Shown here: positions 6,315-47,809 of the stretch, piece after piece
Numbering within the stretch: the first letter of the stretch is position 1
Layout of the letters: the number at the start of each line of letters is the position of its first letter
Assembly (NCBI GenBank): GCA_024704765.1
Contig: JAKMXF010000311.1
Location: forward strand, 358,426-422,425
DNA length: 64,000 bases
Direction of reading: 5' to 3'
Origin: Oopsacas minuta
Lineage: Eukaryota; Animalia; Porifera
Notes under the pieces: model-generated
Told to the model about the DNA's origin: nothing
The model's input: only the letters and a program-made list of their open reading frames with translations
The model's database searches: none
Made by a program: the position numbers and the translations under genes

Positions 6315-6357
6315 AGTGCTAGTGTATGTACAGTCGTGGACTATGTAGTTCACAATA

Positions 6358-6492
6358 CAGTCAATTCTAGTTATATCGAAGCACAAGGGAGAGAGATAAT
6401 TACTTTGATATAAGCGATGATATGTTACTCTACGGCTCGTTTGGGACCATGTTTGTACAATAGCAGACTTCAATATAAGCGGAAGTTAACTG
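6358..6492. mobile_element. pogo/Tigger-like MITE (family 1, TIR about CAGTCAACTCCCGTTATATCGAA)
   Basis: TA-cagtcaattctagttatatcgaa ... ttcaatataagcggaagttaactg-TA: imperfect terminal inverted repeats with TA on both sides. Related copies at 4934-5027, about 24708-24806 and 43605-43746; solo ends near 2125, 11525, 17400, 20865, 22715 and 39955. Confidence 0.75.
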
Positions 6493-6585
6493 TAACTTAA
6501 TTGCAATATTTACTGTTGATTTGGATAATATTATTATTGATAATTCATTATTTATACACATTATCCATTCAGTAATAAATACGTG

Positions 6586-7404
6586 TTAATAAGATTTACT
6601 CTTAGAAGCAGAATACCTTTCTTCAAATTTATCATATCCCTTCTTGGTCTGGAATTCAGTCTGTGAGAAGAGATTTCCCTCAACTTTCAGCAAACTTATC
6701 TTAGAAACAGTCAATATTTCAGTGGGAATTCCCTCAAGCTTGAGTCTATTATTTTCAACTTTTAGTACTTTTAAGTATGGACAATTTGCCATCTCAATTG
6801 GTAGTGACGTAATACTATTAGTGCTTATATTCAATTCGTGTGCATTTAGGTCTGCCATACAAACTGGTAGTTCACTGATATTATTATAAGAGAGGTCTAT
6901 TATGGCTATGTTTGGGAGGAAAGTGAGGGAGATTGGGAACGATGGGAATAAATTATTTGATAATTCTAGACTTTTTAGTGATTTTAAGCTAAGAAAAGTC
7001 TCTGGTAGTGTAGCTAGTCTGTTGTTTGAGAGGTTTAGGATTTCTAGCCTTTTGCATAGACCAATGTCATCTGGTAATTGTTCTATTTGGTTTGTGTGTA
7101 AGGTCAGAGCACGGAGAGATTGAAAAGCCGCGATTTCCGGGGGAACTTGTACGATACAGTTCCGAGATAAATCAAGTGTTCGTAGATTCTTTAACTGGAA
7201 TATCTCAACAGGGAAATTACACAGTTTGTAATCTTTAAAAGTGAATACACCAATAGTAGAGGCTTGCTTTAGGTGTAGAGAGAGGGATTGGGCCTTATTA
7301 GGAGTTCCTCTAACCTTGCTTAGTCCTGTAGATTGTACAGATGCTGGTTTTGTTGTTGGTTGAGGTTTTGGTTTGGGATCTGCTTGCGGTAGATTATTAC
7401 CCAT
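6586..7404 (-). CDS. LRRC57: Leucine-rich repeat-containing protein 57
   Basis: MGN start, GVFTFKD, LRR array, and C-terminal KVEGNLF...KGYDKFEERYSASKSK matching the LRRC57 end. Confidence 0.88.
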   Translation of the reverse strand: MGNNLPQADPKPKPQPTTKPASVQSTGLSKVRGTPNKAQSLSLHLKQASTIGVFTFKDYKLCNFPVEIFQLKNLRTLDLSRNCIVQVPPEIAAFQSLRALTLHTNQIEQLPDDIGLCKRLEILNLSNNRLATLPETFLSLKSLKSLELSNNLFPSFPISLTFLPNIAIIDLSYNNISELPVCMADLNAHELNISTNSITSLPIEMANCPYLKVLKVENNRLKLEGIPTEILTVSKISLLKVEGNLFSQTEFQTKKGYDKFEERYSASKSKSY

Positions 7405-7547
7405 TCTAATATGCATGAACTTATACAAGAAATAAATAATTGATTTAGTAATCTCACATACTTTTTAGTTATATCAAATATGATATCTAATATTGATAAA
7501 TATACTACATTCAATCATTTCCACCCATTTTCATACTACGAGTATAC

Positions 7548-8684
7548 TCACTTCAGCTTGAGTAATATATTCTGTATAATAGTATAAGAGGCATCTCTAC
7601 CGTGATAATCTATATGTCCTCTCTGCCAATCAAATCTCCATTGTTTTTCGTCGATAACTTCCTCTATATCTTCTTGTTCAATAATCGGAGCTTCTAGATT
7701 CAATTCTTCCATTTCTGCTTCTGGGATTTTATGTACAGGCTCAACTTCTTCATGGTTACCGACATGATCATTTGGAATGTTGATAATGACATCATCTTCA
7801 AGCTCAGCAGTATGTTCTATTGTAACATCAGGTAATATGGTATGTGTGTGATCAAGTGAAATTTTAATTTGTGGAATTTCATGCTCTGTTTTGGATTTAT
7901 GAACTTCATTCCTGTTGAAGTATGTATCTTTCTCATTATAAAAGTCCCACCATTTAGCATAGAACTCGTCCCTACTGGTATCAAGGTTCTTGCCTACATT
8001 TTCACTCGATACGTAACAAGGCCGCAACCAAGGTTTATCCAGGCCTAAGAAATGCAGGACACGGATATCACGTTTAAACTTCAGAATAGCAGCGTTATAG
8101 AAATAAGACATATTGATTGCAACATTAAAGATGAAAGGCAATCGTTTATCCTGTTCATTAACCCAATTAACCCAGTAAGTGTTAAACAGGCCCTGATCAC
8201 CTCCATCAAACGATCCCACGTCACCAGCAAGCTTCAGGAGGTTACGGTATGTCTCTAGGCAAGGTTTGAATACGAATACACCCGAATTGAAACAATCAGG
8301 CCAGCCGATATCTGGAGCAGCTGACAACTCGTCTCTACAGAATAACTCATCTATATTACGTAGCACTATAGTATCCGCGTCAAGGAATACACAAGTTTTG
8401 AATTGGATTAATTCCCATACGAGGAGTTTTGAAAATGTAACACCTAATTCAGGACGTCCGATCAGTGACAGGTGCCTAATATCTTTGCTATCTAACACGT
8501 CTATTTGTATGATCTCATCCCATATAGTTCTTAAGTTATTTCTAAGCTCTTGATTTACACCATCAGATACTAGAACAACTTTTCTATACTTTGTATCTGT
8601 TTTGCATAGAGATATGCCCAGTGCAACAGCTCCGTGGTAATAGTACTCGTTTGTTATAATTGTGACGTAAGCGTTGTCTATCAT
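7548..8684 (-). CDS. GYG1: Glycogenin (GT8)
   Basis: NAYVTIITNEYY, FLDADT (DxD), PDIGWPDCFNSGVFV, FDGGDQG, SYFY autoglucosylation Tyr region, and C-terminal WQRGHIDYHG glycogen-synthase-binding motif. Confidence 0.93.
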   Translation of the reverse strand: MIDNAYVTIITNEYYYHGAVALGISLCKTDTKYRKVVLVSDGVNQELRNNLRTIWDEIIQIDVLDSKDIRHLSLIGRPELGVTFSKLLVWELIQFKTCVFLDADTIVLRNIDELFCRDELSAAPDIGWPDCFNSGVFVFKPCLETYRNLLKLAGDVGSFDGGDQGLFNTYWVNWVNEQDKRLPFIFNVAINMSYFYNAAILKFKRDIRVLHFLGLDKPWLRPCYVSSENVGKNLDTSRDEFYAKWWDFYNEKDTYFNRNEVHKSKTEHEIPQIKISLDHTHTILPDVTIEHTAELEDDVIINIPNDHVGNHEEVEPVHKIPEAEMEELNLEAPIIEQEDIEEVIDEKQWRFDWQRGHIDYHGRDASYTIIQNILLKLK

Positions 8685-8766
8685 AACAACGAAAACTAAC
8701 TAATGGCATACTTATTCGTTAAGAAATATTTAGGTTTCAGTTAATTTAGATCTAGCTAGCTATAAC

Positions 8767-8978
8767 ACAGTCAGAATAGGGTTTTTTGCTACCTTGATCA
8801 CTTCAAAAATTGTATTTAATGTATATTTTCTGGCTATTTTCCCTCTCAGTTCCTGTCTCTCTTTCATTCGTCAAGTTTGTGAAAAATTCTCGATTTCGAG
8901 TGCAATTTTTATTAGTAAAAATGAAATATCATCTCATTTCCGTGAATTTTTGGGGCAAAAACCCCCGATTTCGACTGT
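8767..8978. mobile_element. About 210-bp MITE-like element
   Basis: acagtcagaatagggttttttgc ... gcaaaaacccccgatttcgactgt form imperfect terminal inverted repeats. Confidence 0.5.
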
Positions 8979-9054
8979 ATTGTAGTTGGTAACATTTGGA
9001 AAATGTTGCAACTAATTTTACTGGAATTATATAACTTTGCTGGAAAGTACAGAC

Positions 9055-9648
9055 CTGTTGTATGACAGTTTTACTACCTCTATTACTGGTACCATGGATG
9101 CTCTATATCCATGGCAGAGTTACTACCTTACATGACAGAATTATTACCCTTTGATCGTATAACTCAACTCTTAGTTCTTATGACACTGATAATAATGCAT
9201 TTGTTTCTGCTTGAGAGTTATATTAATAGCGATATGTCTACTCACTTCATATATTTCGAAATTGTTACTTTTGCTAAATATAATAGCAATTATATATTCT
9301 AAAATATATGAATTTGATGAACTACAACAGTTACGTTAGGGTTAGACAATTAATTGGCCATCGGGACACATTACTAAGAAACACAAATTATGAAAGTATT
9401 GTAGGTCATCCACCACTCAACGACCATCGTATCACTAAACCTGTAGTTATGTAATATAACTCTCAAGCAGAAACAAAGAAACCATTGAAAATGCATTATT
9501 ATCAGTGTCATAAGAACTAAGTGTTGAGTTATACGATTCATGTCATGATCAAAGGGTAATAATTCTGTCAAGTAAGGTAGTAACTCTGTCATGCATATAG
9601 AGCATCCATGGTACCAGTAATAGAGGTAGTAAAACTGTCATACAACAG
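9055..9648. repeat. Long inverted repeat (arms 9055-9224 and 9453-9648, spacer about 228 bp)
   Basis: The arms are near reverse complements (ctgttgtatgacagttttactacctctattactggtaccatggatgctctatat...) with small indels. This explains the mirror ORFs 9111-9302(+) and 9374-9592(-). Confidence 0.9.
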
Positions 9649-9736
9649 ACCTAATTTGCCATATATCATATTACTTATGATATGTGTAACTATAAATTGG
9701 ATATCTTACAAATATACACAAAAAATTCTTACTATT

Positions 9737-10829
9737 ATGGCAACTCTACACCCAATGGAAACTGAATATACGATTCTTCCTCAAAGATTTGATGATGGCG
9801 GGGCGGAAGATAAGTTCGATGTAAGGTTAGATTATAGTGGGCGTGGGATGGGGGAAGAAAGACCAAAACCAGAACCAATAAAAAAGCCCGAATTAACCGA
9901 AGAAGAGAAGGTCGAACAGGCAAAAATACAGATTCTAAAAGATGCGAATAGAATAACAGAATTGGATTTGTTGACTAAATTAGCAGAAAAGATAACTCCA
10001 ACACAAGTTAGTGATATTAAGATTACTATGAAAATCTATAAGGAAGATTGGAAGGAAGCAATGAATGGACCTGGTTTAATTAAGTATTTGGATGAATTAA
10101 GCAAGAGCGAACCAAAACCGAATCGATTCAGTCCAAAGGATTATGATACTCCACCGGAGTATAATGCTGGGGTCTTAGCAGGGTATCTATTCAATATAGG
10201 TAAGTCAAAAGTTTATGCCAAATCCAAAATCACTGAACTTTGCCCTTGATCTGGCAACTGTGTACGCTCGTTTACACGTTATAAATGCAAAAATATTGTT
10301 TTGAGTGACGTACTATCTAGGTTTATATCAGTTGAGCAATGAAGCAAGATGGATTGAAGCAATAACTAGTATAGATGAACCTAAAGAGGAAGCAACAGTA
10401 GAACATTTCTTCGATAATTTGGTGGATAAACTGAAAAATAATAAAGAATTGTACTCAGAACTCAGATATAAAGCCGAAAATTATCCACGTAAAGTAGGAC
10501 AAGTAAGTACATACTATACTTTAGATGTGATGGGAGTTGACTGTAGTTATATTTGTGTTTGACTTAATATTGTATTTTAGATTCTGGAAGAATTATCTCA
10601 AGAAGGATATTTCCAGAGAAATTTAATAGAATTTTGTGCAACACTTGATTATAAAGGAAAATTCAAAATAAGAGAAGAGTTGCAAAAAGAATATTTGAAG
10701 TCATTTGACCGGAAGTATAAGGATGTGGAATTTAAGACAGAATTCTCAAGATTAGCTAGTAAATTGGCGAGTACAGAAGGAGAGAGCGTAGAAGATGATT
10801 ACAGTGATTACAGTGATTACAGTGATTGA
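9737..10829 (+). CDS. 3-exon hypothetical protein (9737-10199, 10321-10502, 10581-10829; 297 aa), possibly with two death-effector-like domains
   Basis: Phase-compatible GT-AG junctions. Two helical blocks have DED-like hydrophobic periodicity; acidic DDYSDYSDYSD tail. Confidence 0.6.
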
Positions 10830-10920
10830 AATGTGAATTTTGATTTTCATAATATTTTCACTACTTGTAGATATTCTGTGTGATATTATAAGTCAATAAT
10901 AAATTATGAATTTATTAAGT

Positions 10921-11017
10921 GGGTCCCAATTTGGAGTACATGGATCTCTTGGGGGACCACAGAATGTGCTAAAATTGGTATAGGGGCCCGTGGGCGAAAA
11001 AAGGTTGAGAACCGTTG
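10921..11017. mobile_element. hAT/Charlie-like terminal remnant
   Basis: aaaaaggttgagaaccgttg is the reverse complement of CAACGGTTCTCAACCTTTTT, a Charlie-type TIR, and is followed by acctagag. Confidence 0.45.
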
Positions 11018-11237
11018 ACCTAGAGTAAGATGACGTAGGTGATAACTTAAATTATACGAAATATTTTGTAACCAACTATATTGTAAATAGAACGCGTGTA
11101 TATATTTGATAATTATGTAAAGTATGTTTTCTCTCCAATTTATATATAGCACGAAAACAAAGTAAACAGTTTTTAGGGAGGAGGAGCAGTTCTATAGATA
11201 ATATCCATGATTCAATTTAATACATTAATAGAGTTAA

Positions 11238-12418
11238 TTAATTTTTCACATCTGTGAATGAGGGCATTGCATCTTCTAAGGTAGGAGCTCGAGTATGACC
11301 TTTACTGTTACGTCCGCCATTGAAATTCTTGTAGAAATAGACTTTTATCTAAATAAGAGTTGTTAGCAATAAGTACGGTAAACTCTCGTAATTTCGAAGC
11401 CCAATAGGCCGCGATAATTACTTCGATATAATCGACGTAATTATGTTATTTTCACTGTTTGGGACAATAATAGCACAAAATCAGACTACGTTATAAACGG
11501 GTATTTGGATGTATCCGTGCTCGTATAACAGGAGTTGACTGAAATTGATTTACTCCGCTTACAACGAATAAACCAACCACGATCCCAGTCCCTAGCAGTT
11601 CGTTATAAGGATAGTTTACTGTAATATCCATAGTCCATTATACTTACCTTTCTCCTACTGATGTAACAGAAGAATAAAGCAATTATTGTAAAGAAAGAGC
11701 AAAATAGAAAGAATGAGAACACAGACGTTTGATAGAAGTGTTTTGTAGTAACTAATGGTGCAATAGGTGTATTTGTATCATCCAGTTTTGTTTCTTTATC
11801 TGGTACCCCAGGTGTTGCATTTGGCATCAAATGTTCTGCATCTGGCGCCACAGGTTCTGCATCTGGCGCCACAGGTTCTGCATCTGGCGCCACAGGTTCT
11901 GCATCTGGCGCCACAGGTTCTGCATCTGGCGTCACAGGTCCTGCATCTGGTGTCACAGGTCCTGCATCTGGTGTCACAGGTCCTGCATCTGGTGCCTCGG
12001 CTTCAGTGGGTGAAGCTGTTATTACTGATGTTGCATTTGTTGTATTGGATGGTGGAGTTATCGCATTAACTTCTGGGGTATTAGATTCTGCAGATAAGGT
12101 TGTGCTTTCGGTTTTACTAGCCCCCGGCGTGTCTGGGATGTCCCACCTCTTCAATAATGCTTCCAGTACTTTGATAAATGTTTCGGTTTTCTTAAGTCCG
12201 TTCTTATCGTTAGATAACATCATCATGATTTTGACTTCTAGTTCTTTCTCGGTATCTTCTGGTATAGAAGCTTGTGTAGTGTCAGCTTTATTATTATTGT
12301 TTGGCACAACATTGCCACCATTACCGTTCTGTTCTCTCGCTTCTGATCTACCCAATATAAATAGATTGAGAACTAGAATAGATAGCAACAATGCACACTG
12401 CATATATTTCGGCCTCAT
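11238..12418 (-). CDS. Type I membrane mucin-like protein, TGN38/KCT2(C5orf15)-like; exons 12418-11648 and 11348-11238
   Basis: Signal peptide, T/P/A-rich ectodomain, TM followed by RRK. The phase-0 intron AAG|gtaagt...ttatttag|ATA gives the tail IKVYFYKNF...TLEDAMPSFTDVKN, similar to KCT2 NVNEAMPS. Confidence 0.55.
11836..11995 (-). repeat. 21-bp coding tandem repeat (DAGPVTP x3, DAEPVAP x4)
   Basis: tgcatctggcgccacaggttc / tgcatctggtgtcacaggtcc units are directly visible. Confidence 0.95.
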
Positions 12419-12897
12419 TCTATCTGTGCGAGAAGAGCTAATTGAAAATTACAAAATTTTGAAAAGATAAGTTGAGGATAATAACCTTATAATATCGATT
12501 TAGATACATATGAATAATCCAGTGTTGCCAGATGACCCCCACAAAGATCATGCCATGTCTATACCAACTTCACGCCGAAGTTCTTGGTGCATGTCAAGTT
12601 CTTGCCATAAGTCAAAATATATTAACTGGCATATAGCAAGGCGGTAGCAAGCAGATGTCAATTGGTCAGGTTGTCCTATGCAAGATATATGGGACACTAA
12701 GTTGGTCGGGTTGAAACCTGACCAACTGGACACTCTCCTACGGCCATGTATATATTATATAAGCATTCACCAGGGATAATAAGTCATAGACTATCGGGGT
12801 CATGCATTCATTTTGATAATTCTGCCTAAACTGATTGAGGAAAATACAGTGTAAAAGTTGTATAAGTATCCTAATTACGTAATAAGTAATCGCGTTG

Positions 12898-14337
12898 CTA
12901 TTCATCCAACAAAGTATCCAATTTGACAATCTTTTTACGATTGAGACTTTCAGGTATCAACATGCCGAACACGATACACAAAACAAGTGCAATTCCGTTT
13001 AGAACAAAAATGAAATGATAGTCGAATGGGAAAATATGTGTGTTGAGGGATACAGCGAATACGGTACCACCGTATATGGGAGCCATCGCCCTGAAAATAC
13101 TACAAATTGAGAGAGATAATCCGTTGACTGCACCTAGCTTATCGGGTGTAACCGAATTGTTTATGAACATTGATAAAGAAGCGAAAACCGCAGATATGAA
13201 TAGCCGCATGAATAGATTGAATAAACCGAGATAAACCACAGCTGGTATAGCGGATAATGCAGATGCAGACGGTATCAGTATGCACACAGGGATTAGTATA
13301 GCTATTGATACACTAAATGACCTCAAACCACCAAACAATTTCTCTAAAATCTGAAATATGAATAAACTGAAAGGTAACGTTATCAATGCACTAATGGCTA
13401 CGACTATTGAAAAATCTTTAATCGACATTTCTAGACCACCCAGATCACGTGGTGCTTTGACCCATAGAGGCAGTACTTCATCTAGAGACATCGTGACGAC
13501 AGAGAATAGAGAATATATGAATATAGTGAGCATGACTACCCAATCTGTAATCAAATGGTAGAATATACTCTTACGGACTATGGATACAAGTTGATGACCT
13601 AACCGTGTTTTGCTGGTACGGGGCGTTGCTAGCATTTCATCTGTCTCATTCTCTCCCTCACTATATACTTGGTCTTCTGCAACATTTATTGCGTGTGTAT
13701 TGGTTTGCTCCTTTACTGGCTCTTTCATGAAGAAATACACTATAATAACTCCAATAAGTAGAATTGCAGCATTCGCAGCTCCAGGTAATACAAAAGGATA
13801 CTTTACGAATATTTCGTATTTAGGAATATCATATTGCATGATTGGATCGGCTAATATTCCACTGAGTCCAGAGCTAAATACCAATCCTAAGCTGAACACT
13901 CCACCGAGGAATCCCATTGCAAACGGTTGAGTAGAATCGTCACTGTATTCTGATATGACTGCTTTAGCTGTTGGTACTATTCCATTGAAAAACCCAATTA
14001 GAAACCGGAATATTATGGCCACAATTACCGTAGTAGAAAAGCCGAAACCTAGAGTTACAAATGCGAGCAATACCCCGGAAATTATCAATACAATTCTACG
14101 TCCAAATTTGTCAGCCAGCAAACCCCAGACAAATGAACCAAGAATTCGTCCAACGAACTGAAAACTTGCAATGAGTCCTGAGTAGTAGCCAATATCCTTC
14201 TCATGCAGATCTGGAATTAAATGTTGTACCATCCAAGGAAGATATGGGAACACCTGAACCATAGTGTATATGCTTGAAAACAACGAAACCAAGGCTGGAG
14301 CACACCTCTTAACAACCAGGAGGTATTTGTTCACCAT
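12898..14337 (-). CDS. MFS transporter (DHA1/ZIFL1-like), intronless
   Basis: About 12 TM helices, MFS motif A GLLADKFGRRIVL, and GFFNGIVPTAKAVISE. Confidence 0.9.
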   Translation of the reverse strand: MVNKYLLVVKRCAPALVSLFSSIYTMVQVFPYLPWMVQHLIPDLHEKDIGYYSGLIASFQFVGRILGSFVWGLLADKFGRRIVLIISGVLLAFVTLGFGFSTTVIVAIIFRFLIGFFNGIVPTAKAVISEYSDDSTQPFAMGFLGGVFSLGLVFSSGLSGILADPIMQYDIPKYEIFVKYPFVLPGAANAAILLIGVIIVYFFMKEPVKEQTNTHAINVAEDQVYSEGENETDEMLATPRTSKTRLGHQLVSIVRKSIFYHLITDWVVMLTIFIYSLFSVVTMSLDEVLPLWVKAPRDLGGLEMSIKDFSIVVAISALITLPFSLFIFQILEKLFGGLRSFSVSIAILIPVCILIPSASALSAIPAVVYLGLFNLFMRLFISAVFASLSMFINNSVTPDKLGAVNGLSLSICSIFRAMAPIYGGTVFAVSLNTHIFPFDYHFIFVLNGIALVLCIVFGMLIPESLNRKKIVKLDTLLDE

Positions 14338-14700
14338 CTGGGTACCTGTGTGTATATCTAATGTATAAATGCATTGAGAATATTCTATTGCAAACTAGTC
14401 TGTATTTTAAAAGTATATAAGGGCCTTATTCGTTTGCAAATATATATTTGTAGTAGCAGCATATTTTGCTACATATAAAACTCAATGATAAAAGGAAATT
14501 TATATTGTGAAAGTCAACAAAAATAGCTCTTTATGATTGTGTATTGTATATGTAACAGAGCCTAATGACAGATAATAATTACTTTGCATTTGTGAGAAAA
14601 TAAACTGATTTCTCATACATATACATAGTTAACACTTTAAAAATAGAAAAGAATTCTGAACAACACAAATACAAAGTAAATCTAAGCTCAATGTATTACA

Positions 14701-17016
14701 TCATTTTAGGTCTGATAGCAAATGCTGATCTACAAAGCTAGCTCTCCTCTGTGCTGCTGTAAACATCTTATCATTACTTTCCCTCATTCTAGGTAAAGTA
14801 TTGTTAACACCCTCGATTACTTGCGCGTTCTCTTCAATTTCTGGTTGAGTTGGTTTGGTGAATTTTAAATGAGAATATCCAGGTAATTCCTGCTCCATTG
14901 TAACAGGTAGTGTAGATATGTAGGTAGGATTTGTCGGCATTTCTATTACACTAATGGCTGCATCTAGTCTGGTAACGGAAGATCTAGATGTTGGAGAAGG
15001 TATTGGAGGTGCCTTAGCATGATAATCGTTAATACTTTCATAAGTAGAGTTTGGTAATTCGGGATATTGTTCATCAAAATATTGCCGACTTGAACGATAT
15101 TCGTTTATTTCTGAAGTTTGACGCATTGGATTCCTAAATTTAACGTCTTTATCACATTTTTGCCACATTTTTTTAGTAAGCAGGAAGATATTTAATCCAA
15201 TACTGAAAGTCAGCACGAGTAATAGCAACGCAGCGATTGCTGAAACGCTTATTAAACCGGTAAACGAAGTTTGCTCTGTAGCACACTCGACGATTGACTC
15301 ATTGGTTATCGAAAAGGTAATTTCACTGAGTGCTATCCATGGTGCTTCCTCATGCACTTCAATATAGAATTCTAGTAAAATCACGTTTGATGTTATCAAT
15401 GGAAATAACAGTATTTTATATGTACCTCCAATTTCTATTACCGTTGATGTGTCAATTACAATCCCATTCACTGCCATGAATATTGGAGCCTGGAAGTCCT
15501 TATCGCGAATATTTCTAGCTCCGTATATTATTATCGTGTCAAAGAAATATACGTCATCAAAATTAATGAGGATTTTCACTATGGATATAGTCTTGTTTGC
15601 AACCATAATATTCCTGTTGTTACCTGTGTCATTTAATTGCCACATCACGAATAGATCTGGAGTGTTTGTAGTTACCACTGTAGAGAATATAGGATTAGAA
15701 TACAGCTAAGTATTGACCTGCAGTGGTGTTCGCCTATTAGTAATTGTTTCAGGCACGTAGAGTCCACTTGTAGAGAGAGTTCATCCAAATACGAATTGTA
15801 AATATGCGAACTACACTCTATTTGGTTACTATTATATCGTGTCAAAACTTTATTATGATAACATAATGAAATTCATTTACTTGTGTATTTATAACTATTA
15901 GCTAGGGTTTTTACAAGAAATATTCTGTTGGGATAAGACAAACAATTTGACTTTTGCATACTTACCAATTCCTTATAATACTCTTCTGGCATTTATCTGC
16001 TGAACGCAGGGATAATAATATAATTATACAAATCTAACATACCTATATATTTGTCCACTAACTTTCCTATACCTCCTGTACAATAATTCTCAGAACATAA
16101 ACCAGTGTATTCAGAATCAGTATGAGTATCTGTACTTCTAAATGGATTTCGACTTGGCTGGCGCATTTCATACTCGAGTATTTGATATTCTTCTACATAT
16201 TGGCTTGCTTTACAACCGTATAGCTCGAATTGGAGGCAATATACCCCCGTATTGAATATACTGTTATCTATGGAAAGAGTCTCTTTACTGATCTATATAG
16301 GGAACAACTAATTGAATTCTATTGTAATAATCACTACTATTCACCCGTTAGTTAGTGAATCTAGTTGAATTTCACGAAGAAAATAGTAAAATAATTCCAA
16401 TAATGACATAATTCCTGCTACAGGTAAACTTGATGCGGGCGGTGGTACTGATACAGGTTTCCAAATAGCAGTGTTCTCTAAATTAACTTACTGTTATCGT
16501 AGTCATTTTCTCAGGTTTCAAAGCAATTTTTAGCGTTTCCTTATCAATTGTATCAGATTGAATCTTTTGATAGGGTAAAAGCGTGCTTGGTACGATTATC
16601 CCCAGGTCTGTACCTATCGGGTATTCTATGGGGTAGCTTGTTGTAGATGCAGAATTTGTGTATGTTACTTTGTAGCTAGCCGAATAATCTTCAGAAAGTG
16701 ATGAATGACAAATCTTTGCATATTCTTTTCCATCAAATCGTTGTCGAATTCCAATTGCATTTATTATGTACTCTTCATCTAGGTTGTACGTGATTTCATT
16801 ATTTGATCCATGTGAAATTGTAAATATAAACACTTTATTAGAATTGAAGAGAGGGATCGATTGATTTTCTCCTGCCACTTCCTTTATCTCAACTCCTGCC
16901 GTTAAAACTATTGCTTGTGGTTTCCCCAATAATATTCTATCATTGCATGTTGGGTTTGTATTGGTTAAGATTACAGACAGGAAAAGGCAAAATGTCAGCG
17001 TCAATAATTTACACAT
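14701..17016 (-). CDS. Discoidin-domain-receptor-like type I membrane protein without a kinase; exons 17016-16492, 16292-16043, unresolved small exon(s), and about 15677-14701
   Basis: Signal peptide, then YCLQFELYGC (discoidin C-terminal motif, cf. DDR CLRVELYGC), then YTGLCSENYCTGGIGKLVD (cf. DDR GGLGQLxDG) and WIALSEITF (cf. DDR WLxxSEIxF). TM and a roughly 155-aa Tyr-containing tail end at the stop at 14701. Confidence 0.62.
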
Positions 17017-40118: not shown

Positions 40119-41529
40119 TCAGTCCATCAGTTTTCCATCGCAAAATGGATCATCAGATTCATGTGAGAATCTACACATTCCGCTATAGTAACCATGTCCT
40201 GATACTTCTACTATTATTCCATTCTTCCCTGCTCCAATAGACTCCTCTTTAACTGCTTGAGCTATGAATTTACCTCCTGAAGGTCCTGTGAACATTCTCT
40301 GTTGTCCAAGCTTGAGATTGTGTTTGTAGAATTGTATGGCAATTCTTGCTGTAGTCCCTGAACCACAGGGACTTCGATCAACCTATTAATTAATTATATT
40401 AAAGATTGTTGCATTGGAGTCATATAGCGTAACCTCCACAAACAGAAACGGAGTTTCAAGCACACCGATATATGCTAAATCGGGTCCTTCTCCCGATTCT
40501 ACCAATTCCCCATTGGTGGAGGCTCACTGTATTATTGTTCTATTAAACTAACTTGAGCATCTCCAAATACAACAAAATTATTACATATTTCTTCAGTATT
40601 ATCATTTTCATCGATAAGAATTGTTCCGTATAGAAATGCAAGATCTGAGTCAGTATGCTGTAACTTAATTGTCTTTCTTAGTAATTCAGTGAGGCTAGCA
40701 GCTGCAGACCTCAAGGCCTCATACCCTGAGGTTTTTAGATCTAAGCCGAACTGAGTAACTAAAGCTACAGCATAGAAAGCACCACCATATGCAATATCGT
40801 AGTGTATAACGCCATAGCCTGGTAACTCTATTTGTGAATCTTGTGAGAAGATATATGATGGCACAGAGATGAAGCGAGCTCTGCCAGACTTTCCTTCTGA
40901 ATACTCCACAAATACAGTTACGAGGCCACAAGGACATTGTATGTTAACTTTAGTCTCAGGAGCTACTGCCGGAACTATACCGTAATCTATAGCATAGCGG
41001 CCTAGAGCTATAACAGCATGCCCACACATTGTAGAATATCCTGTAAATAACCATGGATTATAGCCTATAGAATATATCTTGAGAGAGCTACAATTTTGCC
41101 TCAACCACTTTGCATGGTAATATCTTGAAAACTATAGGTCAATTTTGTATGCGCAAAATGGCAAAAATGTAGGTTCGAGCGTCATCTTCCTGAAAAATTA
41201 TGTCCCGGAACAATTCGTCATACCACAACTACACTGAACAGGGCATTAAACAAACCTTCATTATGCATGAATAGTACTGCCATATCTGCATTGGGCAGAT
41301 CAGGCTTAACAGGAATAACTCCGTACATTGCACGACTACCTCTTGGCTCACAGATAAGTCTTGTTCTCAAATGATCCAGGTGCTTAGTCACAAATTGTCT
41401 TTTCTCTAATATTGTGGTACCCTCAATATTTGGATATCCGGATTGTATAATGCGTACAGGTTCAAGGCAAGTGTGCATTTCTAATGTCTCTAAAATATCC
41501 TGTCCTATCAGCTGTGCTCCACTAGCCAT
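40119..41529 (-). CDS. L3HYPDH: Proline racemase / trans-3-hydroxy-L-proline dehydratase family enzyme (copy A); exons 41529-41256, 41040-40553, 40382-40119; 341 aa
   Basis: EMHT..EPVRII, EPRG, YSTMCGH, DIAYGGAFYA, LYGTILID, VDRSPCGSGTTAR; canonical phase-compatible junctions. Confidence 0.9.
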
Positions 41530-42635: not shown

Positions 42636-44412
42636 TTATTTAAGCAGCAGTCCGTTTGGCAGCGTGTCTTCTTTCTCTATTCTAAACGTGTGTTCTCCTG
42701 TGTAAAAGCTCTGGCCAGAGACCTCAACTACAATTCCATGTCTTTCTCCTCGCTTCTCTTCTCTTAGAGCCCGTCCTGTGAAAAATCCGCCAGACGGCCC
42801 GCTGAAAGTTCGAAGATCTCCGAGTTGTATAAAACCTTTGTAGTACTGAAGTGCTATGCGAGCTGTAACGCCGCTACCACAAGGACCACGAGCTATCTAC
42901 AAATGAGATTAATTTAAATTCAGGTCAATTAATTACAGTGAAACCTCCACAAACTGGGACTTTGTCAGAAATGGGGTAGGACTATTTGCCAGGGCCGTTT
43001 AAGTCCTCAATCAACCCCTGGTATAAATGGGAGAATGGTATCACTAACTACACTATACTTACTTGTCCATCTGCCAATACACAAATATTAGCGGATACTT
43101 CTTCAGGATTCCTATCATTATCATCTATCAGAATAACTCCAGCTAGAACTCCGAGTTCTGGGCACTCTGTATGTTCTATCATAACAGTTCTCCTCAGAGC
43201 TTCTGTTAGTATTACTCCAGCAGCTGACAGACTCTGTGTAGTAGAGTCTTGCAAATTTAGTTTGAATTGACTTACATTTGCAATTGCATAATAAGTTCCA
43301 CCGTATGCAATATCGTAATTAATCCATCCGTAGTGGTCGAGGTGTATTTCATGATCTTTTGTGTAGACGAATGCTGGTACTGAGTGGAATCTGACTCTAC
43401 CAGATTTTCCATTCGAATACTCCACGAATACTTTCACAACTCCACAAGGACATTGTATCTTAACTTTAGTTTCTGGTGCCTGTGGTTTTACGAGCTTGTG
43501 GTCTAGCGCATATCTTCCAAGGGAAATTATACAATGTCCACACATTGTTACATAACCTAGATATGAAAAGGATATCACATATCACAGATTAAGCATTGCA
43601 AATAGAGTCAACTCCAGTCATATAGAAACTCAAAGGACAAGGATAATATAAGCGAATATAACCAGCGAAACGTATGTTTGGGACCATATTTGTACAATTT
43701 CAGACCTCAAAATAAGCAGATATTTCGATATAACTGGAGTTGAGTGTATTTTGCTATCACTTGTAAAGTCAACCATACAACACTACAATTTAGATTTGTT
43801 AGCCACAAATTATTCAACTTTGGAATTTGCATTTTTAGATTCTAAGGACTGATTTTGTCTGCATTCCGTAAATAATTAATTATATTTTAGTTGGTTAGCT
43901 CAGGCTGAGTTTATTGTGGGATTAAGCGGAAAGTATTTTATGTGGATTTTAATTATTTGTAACAGCAATTTTGTAAATAAGTAAAACATATATCAAAGCT
44001 CATTAATTATTTGATTATCCTATTAATTAGCTCATTAAGTACTCAATTAATTATTAACGAATGAAAATTTATTTGTACTACAAGGTTGATTCAAACTAAC
44101 CAGAACTGTTCATGAATAGAGCTGCTATGTCGGCTTCAGGGACATCCGGTGTAACGGGTAGTACCCCAAACATGTCTTTATGTCCTCTTGGCTCTAACAT
44201 AAGTCTCATACGGAGAGAATCTAAATGGCCCCTCGCATATTTTCTCTTTTCTAGGATTGTATTGCCAGTTATGCTCGGATATCCTGCTGTCACTATTCTT
44301 ACTGGATCGCCACATGTATGCATGTCTATTGTAGATATAGAACAGCTGATATCTGTGTTTGTTATAGGGCTGTTGGTAGTAGTAGTGGGGCAAATCTTTT
44401 TTGAGGGAGCAT
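42636..44412 (-). CDS. L3HYPDH: Proline racemase-family domain (copy B), C-terminal part of the fusion
   Basis: TIDMHTCGDPVRIV, EPRGHKDMFG, YVTMCGH, DIAYGGTYYA, IARGPCGSGVTAR. The third exon (42896-42636) is absent from the ORF track. Confidence 0.92.
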
Positions 44413-47400
44413 CTGGAGAGATAATGTTATGTTGAAATACAGTGGAGTTCGCCAATTTGTAATATTCGCCTAAATAGCAAGTACTCACCTAATTGTGCAA
44501 GATTTTCGGAAGAAGAAGATAGAGATCGTTTCTGAGAATCACTTCTATTATGTGTATGCGAATTATCCAATTCTTGTGAATCATTGTTTGTATGAGGAAT
44601 TTCACGTTTCATACAATGGTATAAACTTAAATTCTGTCTGTGTGAGTTATTGTTAATATGTTCAGGTCTTATAAACTGGGGCGGAACTTCTGACTTTAGC
44701 TGGTAAGGTATAGGACTAGCTTTAATAGGAAAATTTTGTATCGGGTAAGGGAGTGTGGGTGTGTTAGGCATTACTAGACTTATGGCATGATATGGGTGAG
44801 CTGGTGATGTTATAGCAGGGCTGGAGAGAGTTTGTTTATAGTTTGTTGATGGAATATCCAAGTGCATACCATTTGCATGCTAAATAATTACAGTTATGAT
44901 AAATAGCAACGTAAAATTGGTTTCAATTGATCTACTGGGGTAAGAAAATACGAATTTTGCACTTTCAAGCTTCTCATATGCAAATTGATTTTGTTTTTAT
45001 GTTTATTGGAACTTGATAACTTACCTTTGGAGTAGATGGAGTAGAAGTAATGGAATAAGATGTAGCAGGGTTAAGCTTTTTCTTAGGATTTGTAGATTGT
45101 ATATTAGGAATTAGGAGAGATAATGGTACATCATGGTTAGCATCAAGTCTGTGTAGACCTGGTGTAGACGGAGAAGGGAGGAGAGGATTAATCTTAGAAT
45201 TTGAAGGATCGAATGTGATTGGAGTTAATGGAGAGAGATGTGAGCTAGCTACACCGCTAGGCATTACTAGATAACTTCTGTTGAATAGAGATGGACTGCT
45301 GGGGGTTATTTCTCCCTGAGAACTTTCAAAAGCATTGAGATTTGTTAGTTTCTAAATGCAATGATAGTTAGAATCAATACATTTGAAATTTGAATATTTG
45401 GAAAGTATTCATTGTTTATGCTGGGATTTTCGAAATATACAGGGAAAAAGTTTGCATATTTCTGTGTGCATTTTCCCAAATAATAGCTTGAAGTTGCAAG
45501 GAAATCTTTTGAAAAAAGTTTAGTAAATGTGTGATAGAAACATAAATAATCTTGTTTCAGAACTTACAGTTGTAACAGACAGCTGGGATGATAAAGATTC
45601 AGACTGAGAGATAGGTCCTAGGGATTGTGAGTTAGTCATATAATGAGGCATTAAATCAGCAATAGAATCTTCATATACACAACTACTGAGCTCATCTGGT
45701 GTTTCTTGGTTAGACTTGGGGAATCCAGGTATTTGTGTGGGTACCTGTGGGTATTCCTTGGAGGGAGTCTCCCCGGCATTATCGGTCAGCTCGTATACCC
45801 TATGGCCTCTTATGTAGACGTCTTTACGTTCTTTAATTCCACGGACGGAGTACAGTGCGCATCTAAAAATTTTTGAGTAATTAGAAACCTAACATGCTAC
45901 AATACATTTGTACTTTGAGATCATGAAACGTAAGGAGTGGAATAAAATCTGTATGTTTATAATTGAATTAGAATACTTATATTGGATTACCATGTGATTA
46001 TATTAGAAAGGAAATATACGAATATTACAAGGAATTGAGTTATTGAAGTTTACTGTTTACAAAGGGGCTGAATTGTTTAAAATCAAAGGTATAACTAATT
46101 TCTATTCAAGTTTCTGTAAATATACACAACATAAATGTTACATAATATGGAATATATTTTGAAGCCTTATTTCAATAGAAATATATTTTGTATAGAAAAT
46201 TACTGAATGAAAGAATTTGGAATTCATTGATTTTGCAGAAAAGAATTTAATATTTCTGAAATTATGATAACGATAGAGGGAATAATATTTGCAACTAATT
46301 TACCGAAAATTGAGTTTCCAGTTTATTGGATTGGCTTCACTCTTCCTATGTTTGCCAGAATAAGATGCCCATTCCTTGTACAAGGCAGCATCTTTATCCA
46401 TGCAATAGGTCTTCTCGCGTGCATGTTTCCAAGGCACAGAGAACAAAGTCTTTCCGTCTGTCAACCATTTAAGTCCCTCGTACTTTCCAGAATTTATTTG
46501 TTCTACTAACCACTTTTTGAGTCGTCGCTTACCTAAGAAAATTTGTAATAAATAGTTGCGTAATTTCTTTAATTCCCTGAATAATGTCAATTCAGAAAAT
46601 TTGCATAAAACATGGAATGTGTTTTAAAGTTTCAATATTCTTTGAAAATGAGGAAAGTGTCTAGTAGCATAAAGATAGAAATCTTGCATTGCGCAAGAAA
46701 TAATGAAATTATAATTAGAAGTATTGGATCAGGCTTTTAAGAAAATACTTTCAATAACAATTTGGTCTGAAAATACTGATTGTGATGCATTACCCATTCA
46801 CTTTCATACAATCTTGTTAATTGACAAACAAAGAGAAATGTTCAGTAATATTGCGAAAATTAGTATTTCATAAAAATATCATTCATCTAAGTTATTTGCC
46901 ACATGTAATCCTATGCAAACTGTACCTTTCGATAACTTTGAGACAAGAATAACAGATCTCATAAATTCGTAATTGCAATCTAATCTATCATAGTCATGAT
47001 AAATGATGTAACATAGCAACCATTCGGATTACACAGGTGTAATGCGTCTAATGTGAAAGTAACGACAATGCATTAATCATCGTGACTTGGTATAAGAAAG
47101 AATTTCAGTTTGGCTACTGTAACATTCCACAGATTGCTGTCATTCCTAAGAGACTACAATTCTCTAAGCAACGTATATCGTGCCAAGAATGCAGTATATC
47201 AGTGTACTCAAAAATTCAAATAGGATTTGGATTGTAATGAAACAACAAAAGACGGAATAAATAATCAAACCTGGAGTTTCAATATTTAGCTCTCCACCGA
47301 ACTCTCCATCAGAATAACTACTGTTAATCAAGTCTAATTCTTGACCGCCTGAGGGAGATTGTGAATCCTGTGTTAGCGGAGACATATTTCCCTTGTCAGA

Positions 47401-47809
47401 GCCTGAGTATACAGGGAGATGAGGTGATGGGGGAGTTATGTTGGTAGAACGATGGTGATTTTCATCCTGGAACATTTCTGGTTTAGTATCAACACAGATC
47501 TAAAGATAGCATTACGTAAATTGGAAATTGTTCAATTTATAGTACAGTGTATGCAGATTATAAGAACACCGGAAATAAGCACTCTAGGAAACCGGTCTTG
47601 ATATATTCCTGTATATTTTATGCCGGTTGTAAGAACATGTGTTGCTACTCCGAAGGTTGTACTCATAAACGACAAACGGCATCCTGTATATTATTGATGA
47701 ATATTATTCATAGGAAAGTTACCTTTTCGTCTTCGTTGTAGTCGGGGAGGATTGTGAGAGGATGAGGAGAAGAAGATTCTATTTCCTGAGATTCAGATGC
47801 CAATTCCAT
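42636..47809 (-). CDS. Predicted IRF-proline racemase(L3HYPDH-like) fusion protein, 9 exons, 874 aa
   Basis: Exons 47809-47723, 47499-47271, 46532-46304, 45862-45568, 45351-45025, 44879-44489, 44412-44101, 43556-43063, 42896-42636 total 2625 nt with no internal stop; all introns are GT-AG and phase-matched. Confidence 0.7.
45790..46532 (-). CDS. IRF: IRF DNA-binding domain (split by intron 46303-45863)
   Basis: RLKKWLVEQINSGKYEGLKW...FSVPWKHA...DAALYKEWA..SGKH...NPINWKLNFRCAL: all five IRF tryptophans are present; IRF4/8-like in style. Confidence 0.95.

What the first reader, a model, noticed from the sequence alone, without database searches (positions are those of the whole stretch)
42636..44330. 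Fused racemase domain has a remodelled active site (DRSP to ARGP)
Seen: the fused copy keeps both catalytic cysteines (TMCGH; PCGSG, Cys codon 42881-42879). However, the near-invariant DRSP motif reads ARGP and HTGGEP reads HTCGDP. Established: the Asp of DRSPC (Asp296 in Trypanosoma cruzi proline racemase, next to Cys300) contacts the substrate. Inference: altered specificity, or conversion of the enzyme into a ligand or redox sensor. The intact ORF, splice sites and Cys pair argue against simple decay.
Basis: partly seen in the sequence, partly recalled or inferred. Interest (0 to 1): 0.7.

Follow-up and report, generated by a model that had tools for sequence, protein, structure and literature searches.

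The report
Racemase-like sensor domain on sponge IRF
An expressed sponge gene joins an interferon-regulatory-factor DNA-binding domain to a proline-racemase-type enzyme domain that has lost, in all six species examined, the aspartate that holds the substrate's nitrogen. The domain keeps both catalytic cysteines and is strongly conserved, so it looks like an enzyme turned into a regulatory module.

Summary
**Observation: confirmed.** On the minus strand the last racemase exon opens I-A-R-G-P-C-G-S-G (Ala codon 42893-42891, Cys codon 42881-42879). MCGH and HTCGDP are also present.

**Not an error, not decay.**
- Four read sets carrying two haplotypes show no variant in the motif.
- Five further sponge assemblies hold syntenic orthologues with Ala at this position.
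- dN/dS is 0.03-0.10, as low as for the stand-alone paralog (0.07-0.13).
- Only Asp→Ala is fixed. Two species read ARSP, so Ser→Gly is not fixed. The Cys of HTC is shared with the paralog.

**The fusion is real.** A read set that behaves like RNA has a spliced GT-AG contig joining the linker to the racemase domain. The nine-exon model is one open frame of 874 codons.

**New findings.**
- The three ring-contacting pocket positions are invariant in the paralog but among the most variable columns in the fused copies.
- The closed-state Tyr-Tyr latch is lost.
- A new invariant Cys makes MCGHC, seen in 0 of 141 canonical relatives.
- Loss of the Asp arose independently in a tunicate, a snail, an acorn worm and an octocoral, each time with the second Cys kept.

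**Best reading (0.5):** a non-canonical, probably non-catalytic dimerising or sensing domain with a thiol centre.

The joined protein was neither searched nor folded, and no activity was tested.

The parts
42636..47809 (-). Nine-exon gene model for the IRF-linker-racemase-like fusion: 874 codons plus stop
   Evidence: All introns are GT-AG and there is a single stop, at codon 875. Spliced joints in run X4 are 47499>47723, 45862>46304, 45351>45571 and 44412>44489; loose ends confirm exon 2>3 and racemase A>B. The exon 5>6 and racemase B>C junctions are inferred from canonical splice sites, frame, the depth drop and conservation.
46304..46532 (-). Exon 3: main part of the IRF DNA-binding domain
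   Evidence: Pfam PF00605, 81.7 bits. PDB matches to the IRF4, IRF7 and IRF3 DNA-binding domains at E 1e-19 to 1e-23. 92-97% identical in five orthologous loci.
45568..45862 (-). Exon 4: end of the IRF DNA-binding domain (the R-CALYS helix) followed by the start of the Ser/Pro-rich linker
   Evidence: Reading; joint 45862>46304; frame check.
44489..45351 (-). Exons 5 (45351-45025) and 6 (44879-44489): Ser/Pro-rich linker with no Pfam domain and no IRF association domain
   Evidence: One search finds 0 families. Linker exons are recognisable at 39-64% identity in orthologues. An in-frame junction of the form QL|[DE]xPxKK is predicted in L002, L005 and L006, and a similar one (HN|ETPAKK) in L009.
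44101..44412 (-). Racemase exon A (a lead peptide, then the domain from 44332). Contains HTCGDP at 44320-44303, EPRGHKDMFG at 44194-44165, and Phe at 44170-44168 in the position of hL3HYPDH Tyr76 / TcPRAC Phe102
   Evidence: The joint to the linker, 44412>44489, has GT-AG ends at depth 2678 in X4.
43063..43556 (-). Racemase exon B. Contains MCGHC at 43545-43531 (catalytic Cys 43542-43540, extra Cys 43533-43531), QCPCG at 43455-43441, Ala at 43143-43141 in the Tyr241 position, and Leu at 43077-43075 in the Phe263 / TcPRAC Phe290 position
42636..42896 (-). Racemase exon C, opening with I-A-R-G-P-C-G-S-G. ARGPCGSG spans 42893-42870, with Ala at 42893-42891 and the second catalytic Cys at 42881-42879
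40119..41529 (-). Tandem stand-alone paralog in three exons with VDRSPCGSG. It is the sister clade of the fused domain
   Evidence: tree support 98/91*.

Best explanation
The last 327 codons of an expressed 874-codon IRF gene encode an L3HYPDH-type proline-racemase-fold domain. It arose by a sponge-lineage duplication of a Cys/Cys enzyme and no longer works as a canonical proline or hydroxyproline racemase, epimerase or dehydratase.

**Shown.**
- The Asp that, together with the MCGH His, holds the prolyl nitrogen is Ala in all six species.
- The ring-contacting side chains vary freely between species.
- The Tyr-Tyr latch of the closed state is gone.
- The domain as a whole evolves as slowly as the paralogous enzyme.
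- It keeps Cys-His-Cys, the two helix-N-terminal glycine loops and the CPC cysteines.
- It has a new invariant Cys that makes C-G-H-C.

**Inferred.**
- The domain replaces the missing IRF association domain. It supplies the homodimer that this fold forms in every solved member, which would bring two IRF DNA-binding domains together.
- Its cluster of reactive thiols, and/or the retained carboxylate-binding cleft, couples dimer or hinge geometry to redox state, an electrophile or a small acid. Transcription factor activity would then respond to that signal.
For: **Family and closest structure.** Pfam PF05544 matches all three exons. The best PDB match for every exon is human L3HYPDH, 7QPO, at E 1.7e-23, 4.2e-35 and 3.9e-23.

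**Fusion and expression.** There is a spliced GT-AG joint from linker to racemase at depth 2678, further joints upstream, and an exon/intron depth contrast in X4. The model is a single open frame.

**Conservation.** Six species carry the same gene order and Ala, with codons GCT and GCA. dN/dS is 0.03-0.10 against 0.07-0.13 for the paralog.

**Role of the Asp.** PMC4113996 Fig. 5 legend and PMC1964878.

**Pocket release.** The equivalents of TcPRAC Phe102, Leu127 and Phe290 read FWWMWC, VNHSQQ and LTLLFC in the fused copies and are invariant in the seven stand-alone copies. All three fall in the top 8.7% most variable columns (hypergeometric P about 6e-4). One of them is polymorphic within the sample, Val/Gly at 43550.

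**Latch residues.** Tyr76, Tyr241 and residue 98 are named in PMC9309405 and are replaced in the fused copies.

**CGHC.** Cys at this column occurs in 6 of 6 fused copies and 0 of 141 canonical family members.

**Convergence.** The Asp was lost independently in Styela, Batillaria, Saccoglossus and Paramuricea, always with the second Cys kept; the first Cys is also kept wherever its region is present, and Tyr76, Ser102 and Tyr241 were mostly lost too.

**Dimer and redox precedents.** hL3HYPDH, TcPRAC and the T. litoralis enzyme are dimers with 1470-2640 A2 interfaces, and hL3HYPDH forms a regulatory Cys104-Cys137 disulfide (PMC9309405). Both of those cysteines are kept here.

**No IRF association domain.** One search finds no Pfam domain in the linker.
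Against: - No activity, binding, redox or oligomer measurement exists.
- The domain keeps almost everything an active Cys/Cys enzyme needs apart from the Asp: both Cys, His106, Met103, Tyr192, Ser275, Arg270 and the glycine loops. Catalysis on a substrate without a protonated ring nitrogen cannot be excluded.
- CGHC is a motif resemblance only. I have no 3-D model, so the Cys-Cys distances are unknown.
- The pocket-variability test was formalised after I had seen the alignment.
- RNA evidence comes from one run of unknown library type, in one study, possibly from the same individual as the assembly.
- The B>C and 5>6 splice junctions are inferred.
- dS is saturated for most species pairs.
Confidence: 0.5

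Rival explanations
1. The domain is still an enzyme with a shifted substrate. Removing the Asp (and in four species the Ser) re-tunes the Cys/Cys acid-base machinery to a cyclic carboxylate whose ring atom is not a protonated amine. Examples would be an N-substituted or betaine proline, 5-oxoproline, pyrroline-2-carboxylate or an oxygen heterocycle. The IRF part would then tether, or be regulated by, turnover of that substrate.
For: Both catalytic Cys, the His, Met103, Tyr192, Ser275, Arg270 and the glycine-rich carboxylate loops are invariant. Purifying selection is strong. The same kind of change (Asp to a small residue, Ser to Gly) recurs in a snail (ARGPC) and a tunicate (GRGPC), which could mark a recurrent specificity switch.
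Against: A new specificity should fix new pocket residues. Instead the three ring-contacting positions take 4-5 states among six species, and one is polymorphic within the sample. The closed-state latch Tyr76-Tyr241 is lost. The other lineages that lost the Asp also lose the His (Styela Glu, Batillaria Thr), which looks more like loss of catalysis.
Confidence: 0.25
2. The domain is a purely structural dimerisation module. Only the fold and the dimer interface are under selection, and the cysteines, His and loops are kept because they are structurally embedded. There is no ligand or redox sensing.
For: Every solved member of the fold is a dimer with a large interface (PMC9309405). The IRF lacks its usual association domain. 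Twenty-six columns are invariant in the fused copies but variable in the paralog, which suggests new surface constraints.
Against: This does not explain why a new Cys next to the catalytic Cys is fixed in 6 of 6 species and seen in 0 of 141 relatives. It also does not explain why every independent lineage that lost the Asp keeps the second catalytic Cys (and the first where its region is present) while losing other pocket residues.
Confidence: 0.15
3. Artefact or decay. ARGP is an assembly error or a private polymorphism, the fusion is a mis-joined gene model, or the domain is a decaying pseudogene remnant.
For: None was found. The only weakness is that all the reads come from one sample and one study.
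Against: Four runs with two haplotypes agree on the motif. Six species share it, with a synonymous codon difference in the Ala codon. dN/dS is at most 0.10. There is a spliced in-frame joint at high depth. The frame of 874 codons is open.
Confidence: 0.02

Closest known systems
[quoted passage not shown]
   Same: It is the best solved match for each of the three exons. Shared features are the fold family PF05544, MCGH, Met103, Cys137 (in CPCG), Tyr192, Arg270, Ser275 and the Asp74 equivalent. The family is dimeric.
   Different: The second catalytic residue is Cys rather than Thr. Asp269 is Ala. Tyr76 is F/W/M/C, Tyr241 is Ala or Leu, Ser102 and Phe263 are variable, and residue 98 is Ser or Ala. 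There is an extra Cys (CGHC). The domain is the C-terminal part of a transcription factor rather than a free enzyme.
Cys/Cys proline racemase (TcPRAC, PDB 1W61) and 4-hydroxyproline 2-epimerases
   Same: The Cys-Cys dyad, the His of MCGH, and the two opposed helix N-termini that bind the carboxylate (PMC4113996, PMC1964878).
   Different: It fails the minimal signature DRSPCGxGxxAxxA at the Asp, and in four species at the Ser as well. The Asp that coordinates the prolyl nitrogen is missing. The equivalents of Phe102, Leu127 and Phe290 are unconstrained.
The tandem stand-alone sponge paralog (window 40119-41529 and its orthologues)
   Same: It is the sister clade (98/91*), with the same three-exon structure, both Cys and CPCG. 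It lies adjacent on the same strand in five of six assemblies.
   Different: The paralog keeps DRSP, Tyr76, Ser102, Tyr241 and Phe263. It has lost the Gly of HTxGEP, the His of EPRGH and the Asp74 equivalent, all of which the fused copy keeps. It is not fused to an IRF.
IRF transcription factors with a C-terminal IRF association domain (IRF3 to IRF9 type)
   Same: The N-terminal IRF DNA-binding domain (PF00605; PDB matches to IRF4, IRF7 and IRF3), followed by a Ser/Pro-rich linker.
   Different: No association domain is detectable. A proline-racemase-fold domain stands in its place.
Animal 'trans-L-3-hydroxyproline dehydratase-like' paralogs that have lost the Asp: Styela clava XP_039249424 (GRGPC), Batillaria attramentaria KAG5704836 (ARGPC), Saccoglossus XP_002739157 (CRAPC), Paramuricea (CRSPC)
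   Same: Loss of the Asp with the second Cys kept (and the first wherever its region is present in the model), usually together with loss of Tyr76, Ser102 and Tyr241. Each arose from a lineage-specific Cys/Cys duplicate.
   Different: Their origins are independent: the one-clade hypothesis is rejected at p-AU 5e-96. They are stand-alone proteins, none has CGHC, and Styela and Batillaria have also lost the His.
The thioredoxin / protein disulfide isomerase C-G-H-C active-site motif
   Same: The same four residues, with the first Cys at a helix N-terminus. The helix position is inferred from the fold description in PMC4113996.
   Different: The fold is unrelated. No structural or redox evidence was obtained here, so the resemblance rests on the motif alone.

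Membership tests
Proline racemase superfamily (Pfam PF05544) | Profile match above the gathering score across the whole domain | tested here: met
   Exons A, B and C score 82.5, 131.7 and 64.8 bits against a cut-off of 27 and cover profile positions 2-324 collinearly.
Functional proline racemase / hydroxyproline epimerase (signatures of Goytia et al., PMC1964878) | MCGH block carrying the first catalytic Cys | tested here: met
   MCGH at 43545-43534, invariant in six species.
Functional proline racemase / hydroxyproline epimerase (signatures of Goytia et al., PMC1964878) | MIII* signature DRSPCGxGxxAxxA | tested here: not met
   The window reads ARGPCGSGVTARIA. The Asp is Ala in 6 of 6 species and the Ser is Gly in 4 of 6.
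Functional proline racemase / hydroxyproline epimerase | An Asp and a His that coordinate the prolyl nitrogen (PMC4113996, Fig. 5) | tested here: not met
   The His is kept and the Asp is replaced by Ala.
Functional proline racemase / hydroxyproline epimerase | Measured racemase or epimerase activity | not testable with these tools
   Needs recombinant protein.
[quoted passage not shown] | A Cys/Thr catalytic pair (DRSPTGSG) | tested here: not met
   The second position is Cys in all sponge copies. The domain still belongs to the same animal sequence clade.
IRF transcription factor family | IRF DNA-binding domain (PF00605) | tested here: met
   81.7 bits; PDB IRF4, IRF7 and IRF3 DNA-binding domains at E down to 1e-23.
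IRF3 to IRF9 type IRFs | C-terminal IRF association domain | tested here: not met
   No Pfam family is found in exons 5 and 6. The C-terminus is the racemase-fold domain.
Thiol-disulfide CxxC redox proteins | A redox-active CxxC pair at a helix N-terminus | tested here: inconclusive
   The CGHC motif is present and invariant. Its geometry and redox activity were not testable here.

The most novel reading that the evidence does not exclude
The gene is a one-component innate immune sensor. The racemase-fold cleft, freed from catalysis, would bind a microbial or damage-derived small carboxylate (a proline analogue, a D-amino acid, pyrrole-2-carboxylate and the like) or react with an electrophile through its thiols. 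That event would directly switch the attached IRF DNA-binding domain on or off.

The between-species and within-sample variation of the pocket side chains would then reflect diversifying ligand recognition, as in immune receptors, rather than relaxation. The link would echo human L3HYPDH being an interferon-stimulated gene (PMC10875296).
Probability: 0.15. Interest if true: 0.9.

Novelty: new variant of a known kind. Interest (0 to 1): 0.62.

Why it matters
If this reading holds, it is a clean natural example of a metabolic enzyme fold recruited as the regulatory C-terminal domain of an animal immune-type transcription factor, in one of the earliest-branching animal groups. The key loss, the substrate-anchoring Asp, is fixed for a long time under strong purifying selection.

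It gives a directly testable model for how IRFs could be controlled before, or without, the association domain. It also points to a recurrent and so far uncharacterised class of Asp-less, Cys-Cys-retaining L3HYPDH-like proteins in several animal phyla.

No paper in the searched library links IRF and proline racemase. No long IRF-racemase protein appears among the best 150 of the 1161 hits (E ≤ 0.001) from a library of 1.84 billion representative proteins.

Tried and rejected
**Sequencing error or polymorphism at ARGP.** Rejected.

**Neutral decay.** Rejected: dN/dS is at most 0.10.

**A single ancient 'ARGP subfamily' shared with Batillaria, Styela, Saccoglossus and Paramuricea.** Rejected. 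Each nests with DRSPC paralogs of its own lineage, and the AU test gives p 5e-96. The group was named after seeing the tree.

**Searching for more fused-type orthologues in JGI metagenome contigs.**
- The single-sequence scan found nothing.
- The alignment scan found nine loci, all DRSPCGSG-type genes; most have stop codons just upstream of the aligned exon, as expected for intron-bearing eukaryotic genes.

**Look-ups that gave little.**
- The contig for the Batillaria ARGPC protein is not on record.
- The PDB search with IRF exon 4 gave no hit, as expected because it is mostly linker.
- P0099/L011, the only other protein with CGHC, sits on a contig too short to show its C-terminal motif.
- Long racemase-containing proteins (Bolivina, a GNAT fusion, Sycon) carry no IRF domain.

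**Left out under the operators' note.** The joined spliced protein or domain was never built as a sequence for any search, fold or tree. Exons were handled one by one by reference. In one search I only walked codons across exon boundaries to count stops.
Full report
**1. What is there**

The window is an intron-bearing animal genome.

Two proline-racemase-family genes lie in tandem on the minus strand. Each has three collinear exons matching Pfam PF05544.
- The downstream gene (40119-41529) stands alone and reads VDRSPCGSG.
- The upstream gene is the finding. Exon A runs 44412-44101, exon B 43556-43063 and exon C 42896-42636.
- MCGH(C) is at 43545-43531 and HTCGDP at 44320-44303.

**2. The fusion and its expression**

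- An IRF DNA-binding domain lies upstream on the same strand: PF00605 at 81.7 bits, with PDB matches to the IRF4, IRF7 and IRF3 DNA-binding domains.
- Two Ser/Pro-rich exons follow, with no Pfam domain.
- A nine-exon model from 47809 to 42636 has GT-AG at all eight introns and a single stop at codon 875.

Four runs of one sample and one study hold the stretch. Three behave as DNA. The fourth, X4, whose library type is not on record, has exon depths of about 4,600-16,500 in fully exonic bins against about 30-1,400 in largely intronic bins. X4 also has spliced contigs with GT-AG ends:
- 47499>47723 and 45862>46304;
- 45351>45571;
- 44412>44489 at depth 2678, which joins the linker in frame to the racemase domain.

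Loose ends confirm the exon 2>3 and racemase A>B junctions. The exon 5>6 and racemase B>C junctions are inferred from canonical sites, frame, the depth drop and conservation.

**3. Error or polymorphism?**

Contigs of all four runs cover the motif. Two haplotypes are present and differ at many neighbouring sites. No difference is reported at 42879-42893.

The differences that do fall in the racemase exons are:
- synonymous changes at 43531, 44309 and 42735;
- a Val/Ala change at 44142 in a variable stretch;
- a Val/Gly change at 43550, at the Ser102-equivalent pocket position discussed below.

**4. Orthologues**

A search of 1.84 billion representative proteins and a word search, both with exon B, returned ORF fragments from ENA assemblies. 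Their contigs are syntenic with the window: a gene of about 1,700 residues, the IRF exons, the linker exons, the fused racemase exons, the stand-alone racemase (absent from L009), then a BTB-BACK gene; ubiquitin-like genes follow in L002 and L005-L007.

Five further assemblies carry the fused gene: L001, L002/L003, L005, L006/L007 and L009. In L002, L005 and L006 an in-frame GT-AG junction of the form QL|[DE]xPxKK can be placed where the window's confirmed junction lies; L009 allows a similar in-frame junction (HN|ETPAKK).

| Feature | Fused copies (6 species) | Stand-alone copies (7) |
|---|---|---|
| Motif before second Cys | [IV]-A-R-[GS]-P-C-G-S-[GS] | V-D-R-S-P-C-G-S-[GA] |
| Residue at the Asp position | Ala in 6/6 (GCT in the window, GCA elsewhere) | Asp in 7/7 |
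| Residue at the Ser position | Gly in 4, Ser in L002 and L009 | Ser in 7/7 |

Nei-Gojobori counts, summed exon by exon, give:
- fused domain: dN/dS 0.03-0.10 (0.07-0.10 for the pairs whose dS is not saturated);
- stand-alone gene: dN/dS 0.07-0.13.

The IRF exon is 92-97% identical across species and the linker 39-64%. Neutral decay is excluded.

**5. What else changed in the active site**

I mapped the exons onto human L3HYPDH, the best solved match for every exon. I also mapped them onto a family alignment of 141 canonical full-length relatives, adding the exons as separate fragments.

Roles of residues from the literature:
- Asp232 and His90 of a 4-Hyp epimerase coordinate the prolyl nitrogen, and Asp232 is four residues before the second Cys (PMC4113996).
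- TcPRAC Leu127, His132, Asp296 and Phe290 are named as neighbour residues that assist the catalytic Cys, and the position equivalent to Phe102 (Val60 in the P. aeruginosa epimerase) as a specificity determinant (PMC1964878).
- In hL3HYPDH, Asp74-Arg270 is a salt bridge and Tyr76-Tyr241 an H-bond of the closed state.
- Residue 98 pairs with Gln267 in the open state.
- Met103, Tyr192 and Ser275 are ligand-site residues, and Cys104-Cys137 forms a regulatory disulfide (PMC9309405).

Kept in the fused clade: Cys104, His106, Met103, Cys137, Tyr192, Arg270, Cys273, Ser275, Gln267, and Asp74 (Asn in one species).

| Human residue | TcPRAC equivalent | Fused copies | Seven stand-alone copies |
|---|---|---|---|
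| Asp269 | Asp296 | Ala (6/6) | Asp, invariant |
| Tyr76 | Phe102 | F, W, W, M, W, C | Tyr, invariant |
| Ser102 | Leu127 | V, N, H, S, Q, Q | Ser, invariant |
| Phe263 | Phe290 | L, T, L, L, F, C | Phe, invariant |
| Tyr241 | – | Ala ×5, Leu ×1 | Tyr, invariant |
| Residue 98 | – | Ser/Ala | Glu (Gly in L010) |

- The three ring-contacting positions (Tyr76, Ser102, Phe263 equivalents) all fall among the 28 of 322 columns with four or more states in the fused clade. The hypergeometric P is about 6e-4. I formalised this test after seeing the data.
- Of 135 family columns conserved at 80% or more, the fused clade keeps 80 and the stand-alone clade 97.
- The fused clade has 26 columns that are invariant in it but variable in the paralog. 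One example is the block QLGDLRTF-GPSGGFFTGRALREE.
- The residue after MCGH is Cys in 6 of 6 fused copies. Among the 141 canonical relatives it is Cys in 0 (Ala 123, Gly 15). This creates C-G-H-C.

**5b. The stand-alone paralog is not a clean control**

The paralog has itself lost residues that are (near-)invariant among the 141 canonical relatives:
- the Gly of HTxGEP, now Cys or Leu;
- the His of EPRGH, now Ser or Gly;
- the Asp74 equivalent, now Ala or Ser.

**6. Phylogeny and convergence**

I built a maximum-likelihood tree on the exon-B columns only, so the motif's own columns are excluded.
- The six fused copies form the sister group of the seven sponge stand-alone copies (98/91*). This indicates a duplication within this sponge lineage.
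- Among about 190 family sequences retrieved with a recognisable motif, the Asp is missing only in a few animal paralogs: Styela clava (GRGPC), Batillaria attramentaria (ARGPC, SYGPC, AHGPC), Saccoglossus (CRAPC), Paramuricea (CRSPC), and one unnamed sequence.
- Styela, Batillaria and Paramuricea each nest with Asp-bearing paralogs or relatives of their own lineage; Saccoglossus is left unresolved on the tree.
- Forcing all Asp-less rows into one clade costs 177.6 log-likelihood units, p-AU 5e-96. The group was named post hoc.
- All of these lineages keep the second catalytic Cys (and the first wherever its region is present in the model). Styela, Batillaria and Saccoglossus also lost Ser102, Tyr241 and (Batillaria) Tyr76 wherever those regions are aligned. 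Styela and Batillaria lost the His as well.

**7. Interpretation**

The data show a domain under strong constraint whose canonical substrate-holding residues are either replaced (the Asp, the Tyr-Tyr latch) or free to vary (the ring-contacting side chains). Its thiol-His-thiol core and the carboxylate loops are frozen, and a further Cys has been added.

The simplest reading is that it is no longer a proline or hydroxyproline enzyme. I infer the following.
- It serves the IRF as a dimerising domain. All solved members are dimers with interfaces of 1,470-2,640 A2 (PMC9309405), and the usual IRF association domain is absent.
- It probably also acts as a thiol-based or small-acid-sensing switch.

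A shifted enzymatic specificity cannot be excluded, because almost all catalytic hardware remains. The unconstrained pocket argues against it.

A more adventurous reading is that the variable pocket reflects diversifying recognition of microbial metabolites by a one-component sensor and transcription factor. In another sponge, IRF is reported as the earliest regulator distinguishing symbionts from foreign bacteria (PMC13372038). Human L3HYPDH is an interferon-stimulated gene with antiviral activity (PMC10875296). Both are context only, not evidence for this gene.

**8. Limits**

- There is therefore no 3-D model, no Cys-Cys distances and no docking.
- RNA support rests on one run of unrecorded type from one study.
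- dS is saturated in most species pairs.

Noticed in passing
window 40119-41529 (-); L001 13184-14966; L002 11550-12633; L005 12148-13244; L006 12522-13951; L008; L010: The stand-alone paralog keeps DRSPC, Tyr76, Ser102, Tyr241 and Phe263. In all seven sponge copies it has lost the Gly of HTxGEP (now C or L) and the His of EPRGH (now S or G), both invariant among the 141 canonical relatives, and also the Asp74 salt-bridge partner (now A or S). Its own activity is therefore uncertain, and its losses are complementary to those of the fused copy.
   Followed up: partly
window 43550, 43531, 44142, 44309, 42735: Allelic differences occur inside the fused racemase exons in the read sets. 43550 changes Val to Gly at the variable Ser102-equivalent pocket position, 44142 changes Val to Ala, and the other three are synonymous. 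None falls in the ARGPC codons.
   Followed up: partly
window about 43675-43710 (intron between racemase exons A and B) and about 47601-47637: Short stretches reach depths of 3,000-5,800 in the DNA-like runs against a baseline of about 90-170, with many loose ends, so they are high-copy repeats. There is also an inversion-like joint carrying the extra letters CCGGGTATA at 47637/47601.
   Followed up: no
L001 about 8970-9056; L005 about 9132-9209; L006 about 9036-9113; L009 about 9344-9421: In orthologues a basic patch P-x-K-K-R-[RK]-S sits directly before the racemase domain and is a possible nuclear localisation signal. The window reads PSKKICP there (44405-44385).
   Followed up: no
window 45861-45844: The IRF recognition helix reads R-CALYS in the window and CALYS in L001. 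From memory, vertebrate IRFs have Asn at the Tyr position (IRF1 Asn86). This might alter DNA specificity.
   Followed up: no
L004 (ERZ26869290 ctg189480), whole 7.9 kb: The contig holds several partial, inverted copies of both the fused-type and stand-alone-type racemase exons. This is either an assembly artefact or a real local rearrangement or amplification.
   Followed up: no
L008 9236-11119; L010 9516-10794: A further DRSPC-type paralog lies at a different locus next to an NHL-repeat gene, and in L010 beside a cluster of TRAF/MATH genes. In the L009 species the tandem stand-alone copy is missing and this may be its only stand-alone copy.
   Followed up: partly
L011 981-1649 (JGI 3300059824): This is the only other protein found with MCGHC. 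It has a 60-residue N-terminal extension and no intron between the A and B parts. The contig ends before the second-Cys motif, and the organism is unknown.
   Followed up: partly
P0011, P0016, P0022, P0171-P0173, P0273: Loss of the substrate-nitrogen Asp recurs independently in L3HYPDH-like paralogs of a tunicate, an acorn worm, a snail (an expanded cluster reading ARGPC, SYGPC and AHGPC) and an octocoral, always with the second catalytic Cys kept (the first as well where its region is present). This is an uncharacterised class in its own right.
   Followed up: partly
L001, L002, L005, L006, L009 flanks: Microsynteny is conserved. In L001, L005 and L006/L007 the order is a gene of about 1,700 residues, the IRF-racemase gene, the stand-alone racemase and a BTB-BACK gene; L002/L003 and L009 share the part from the IRF-racemase gene to BTB-BACK (no tandem stand-alone copy in L009).
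   Followed up: no
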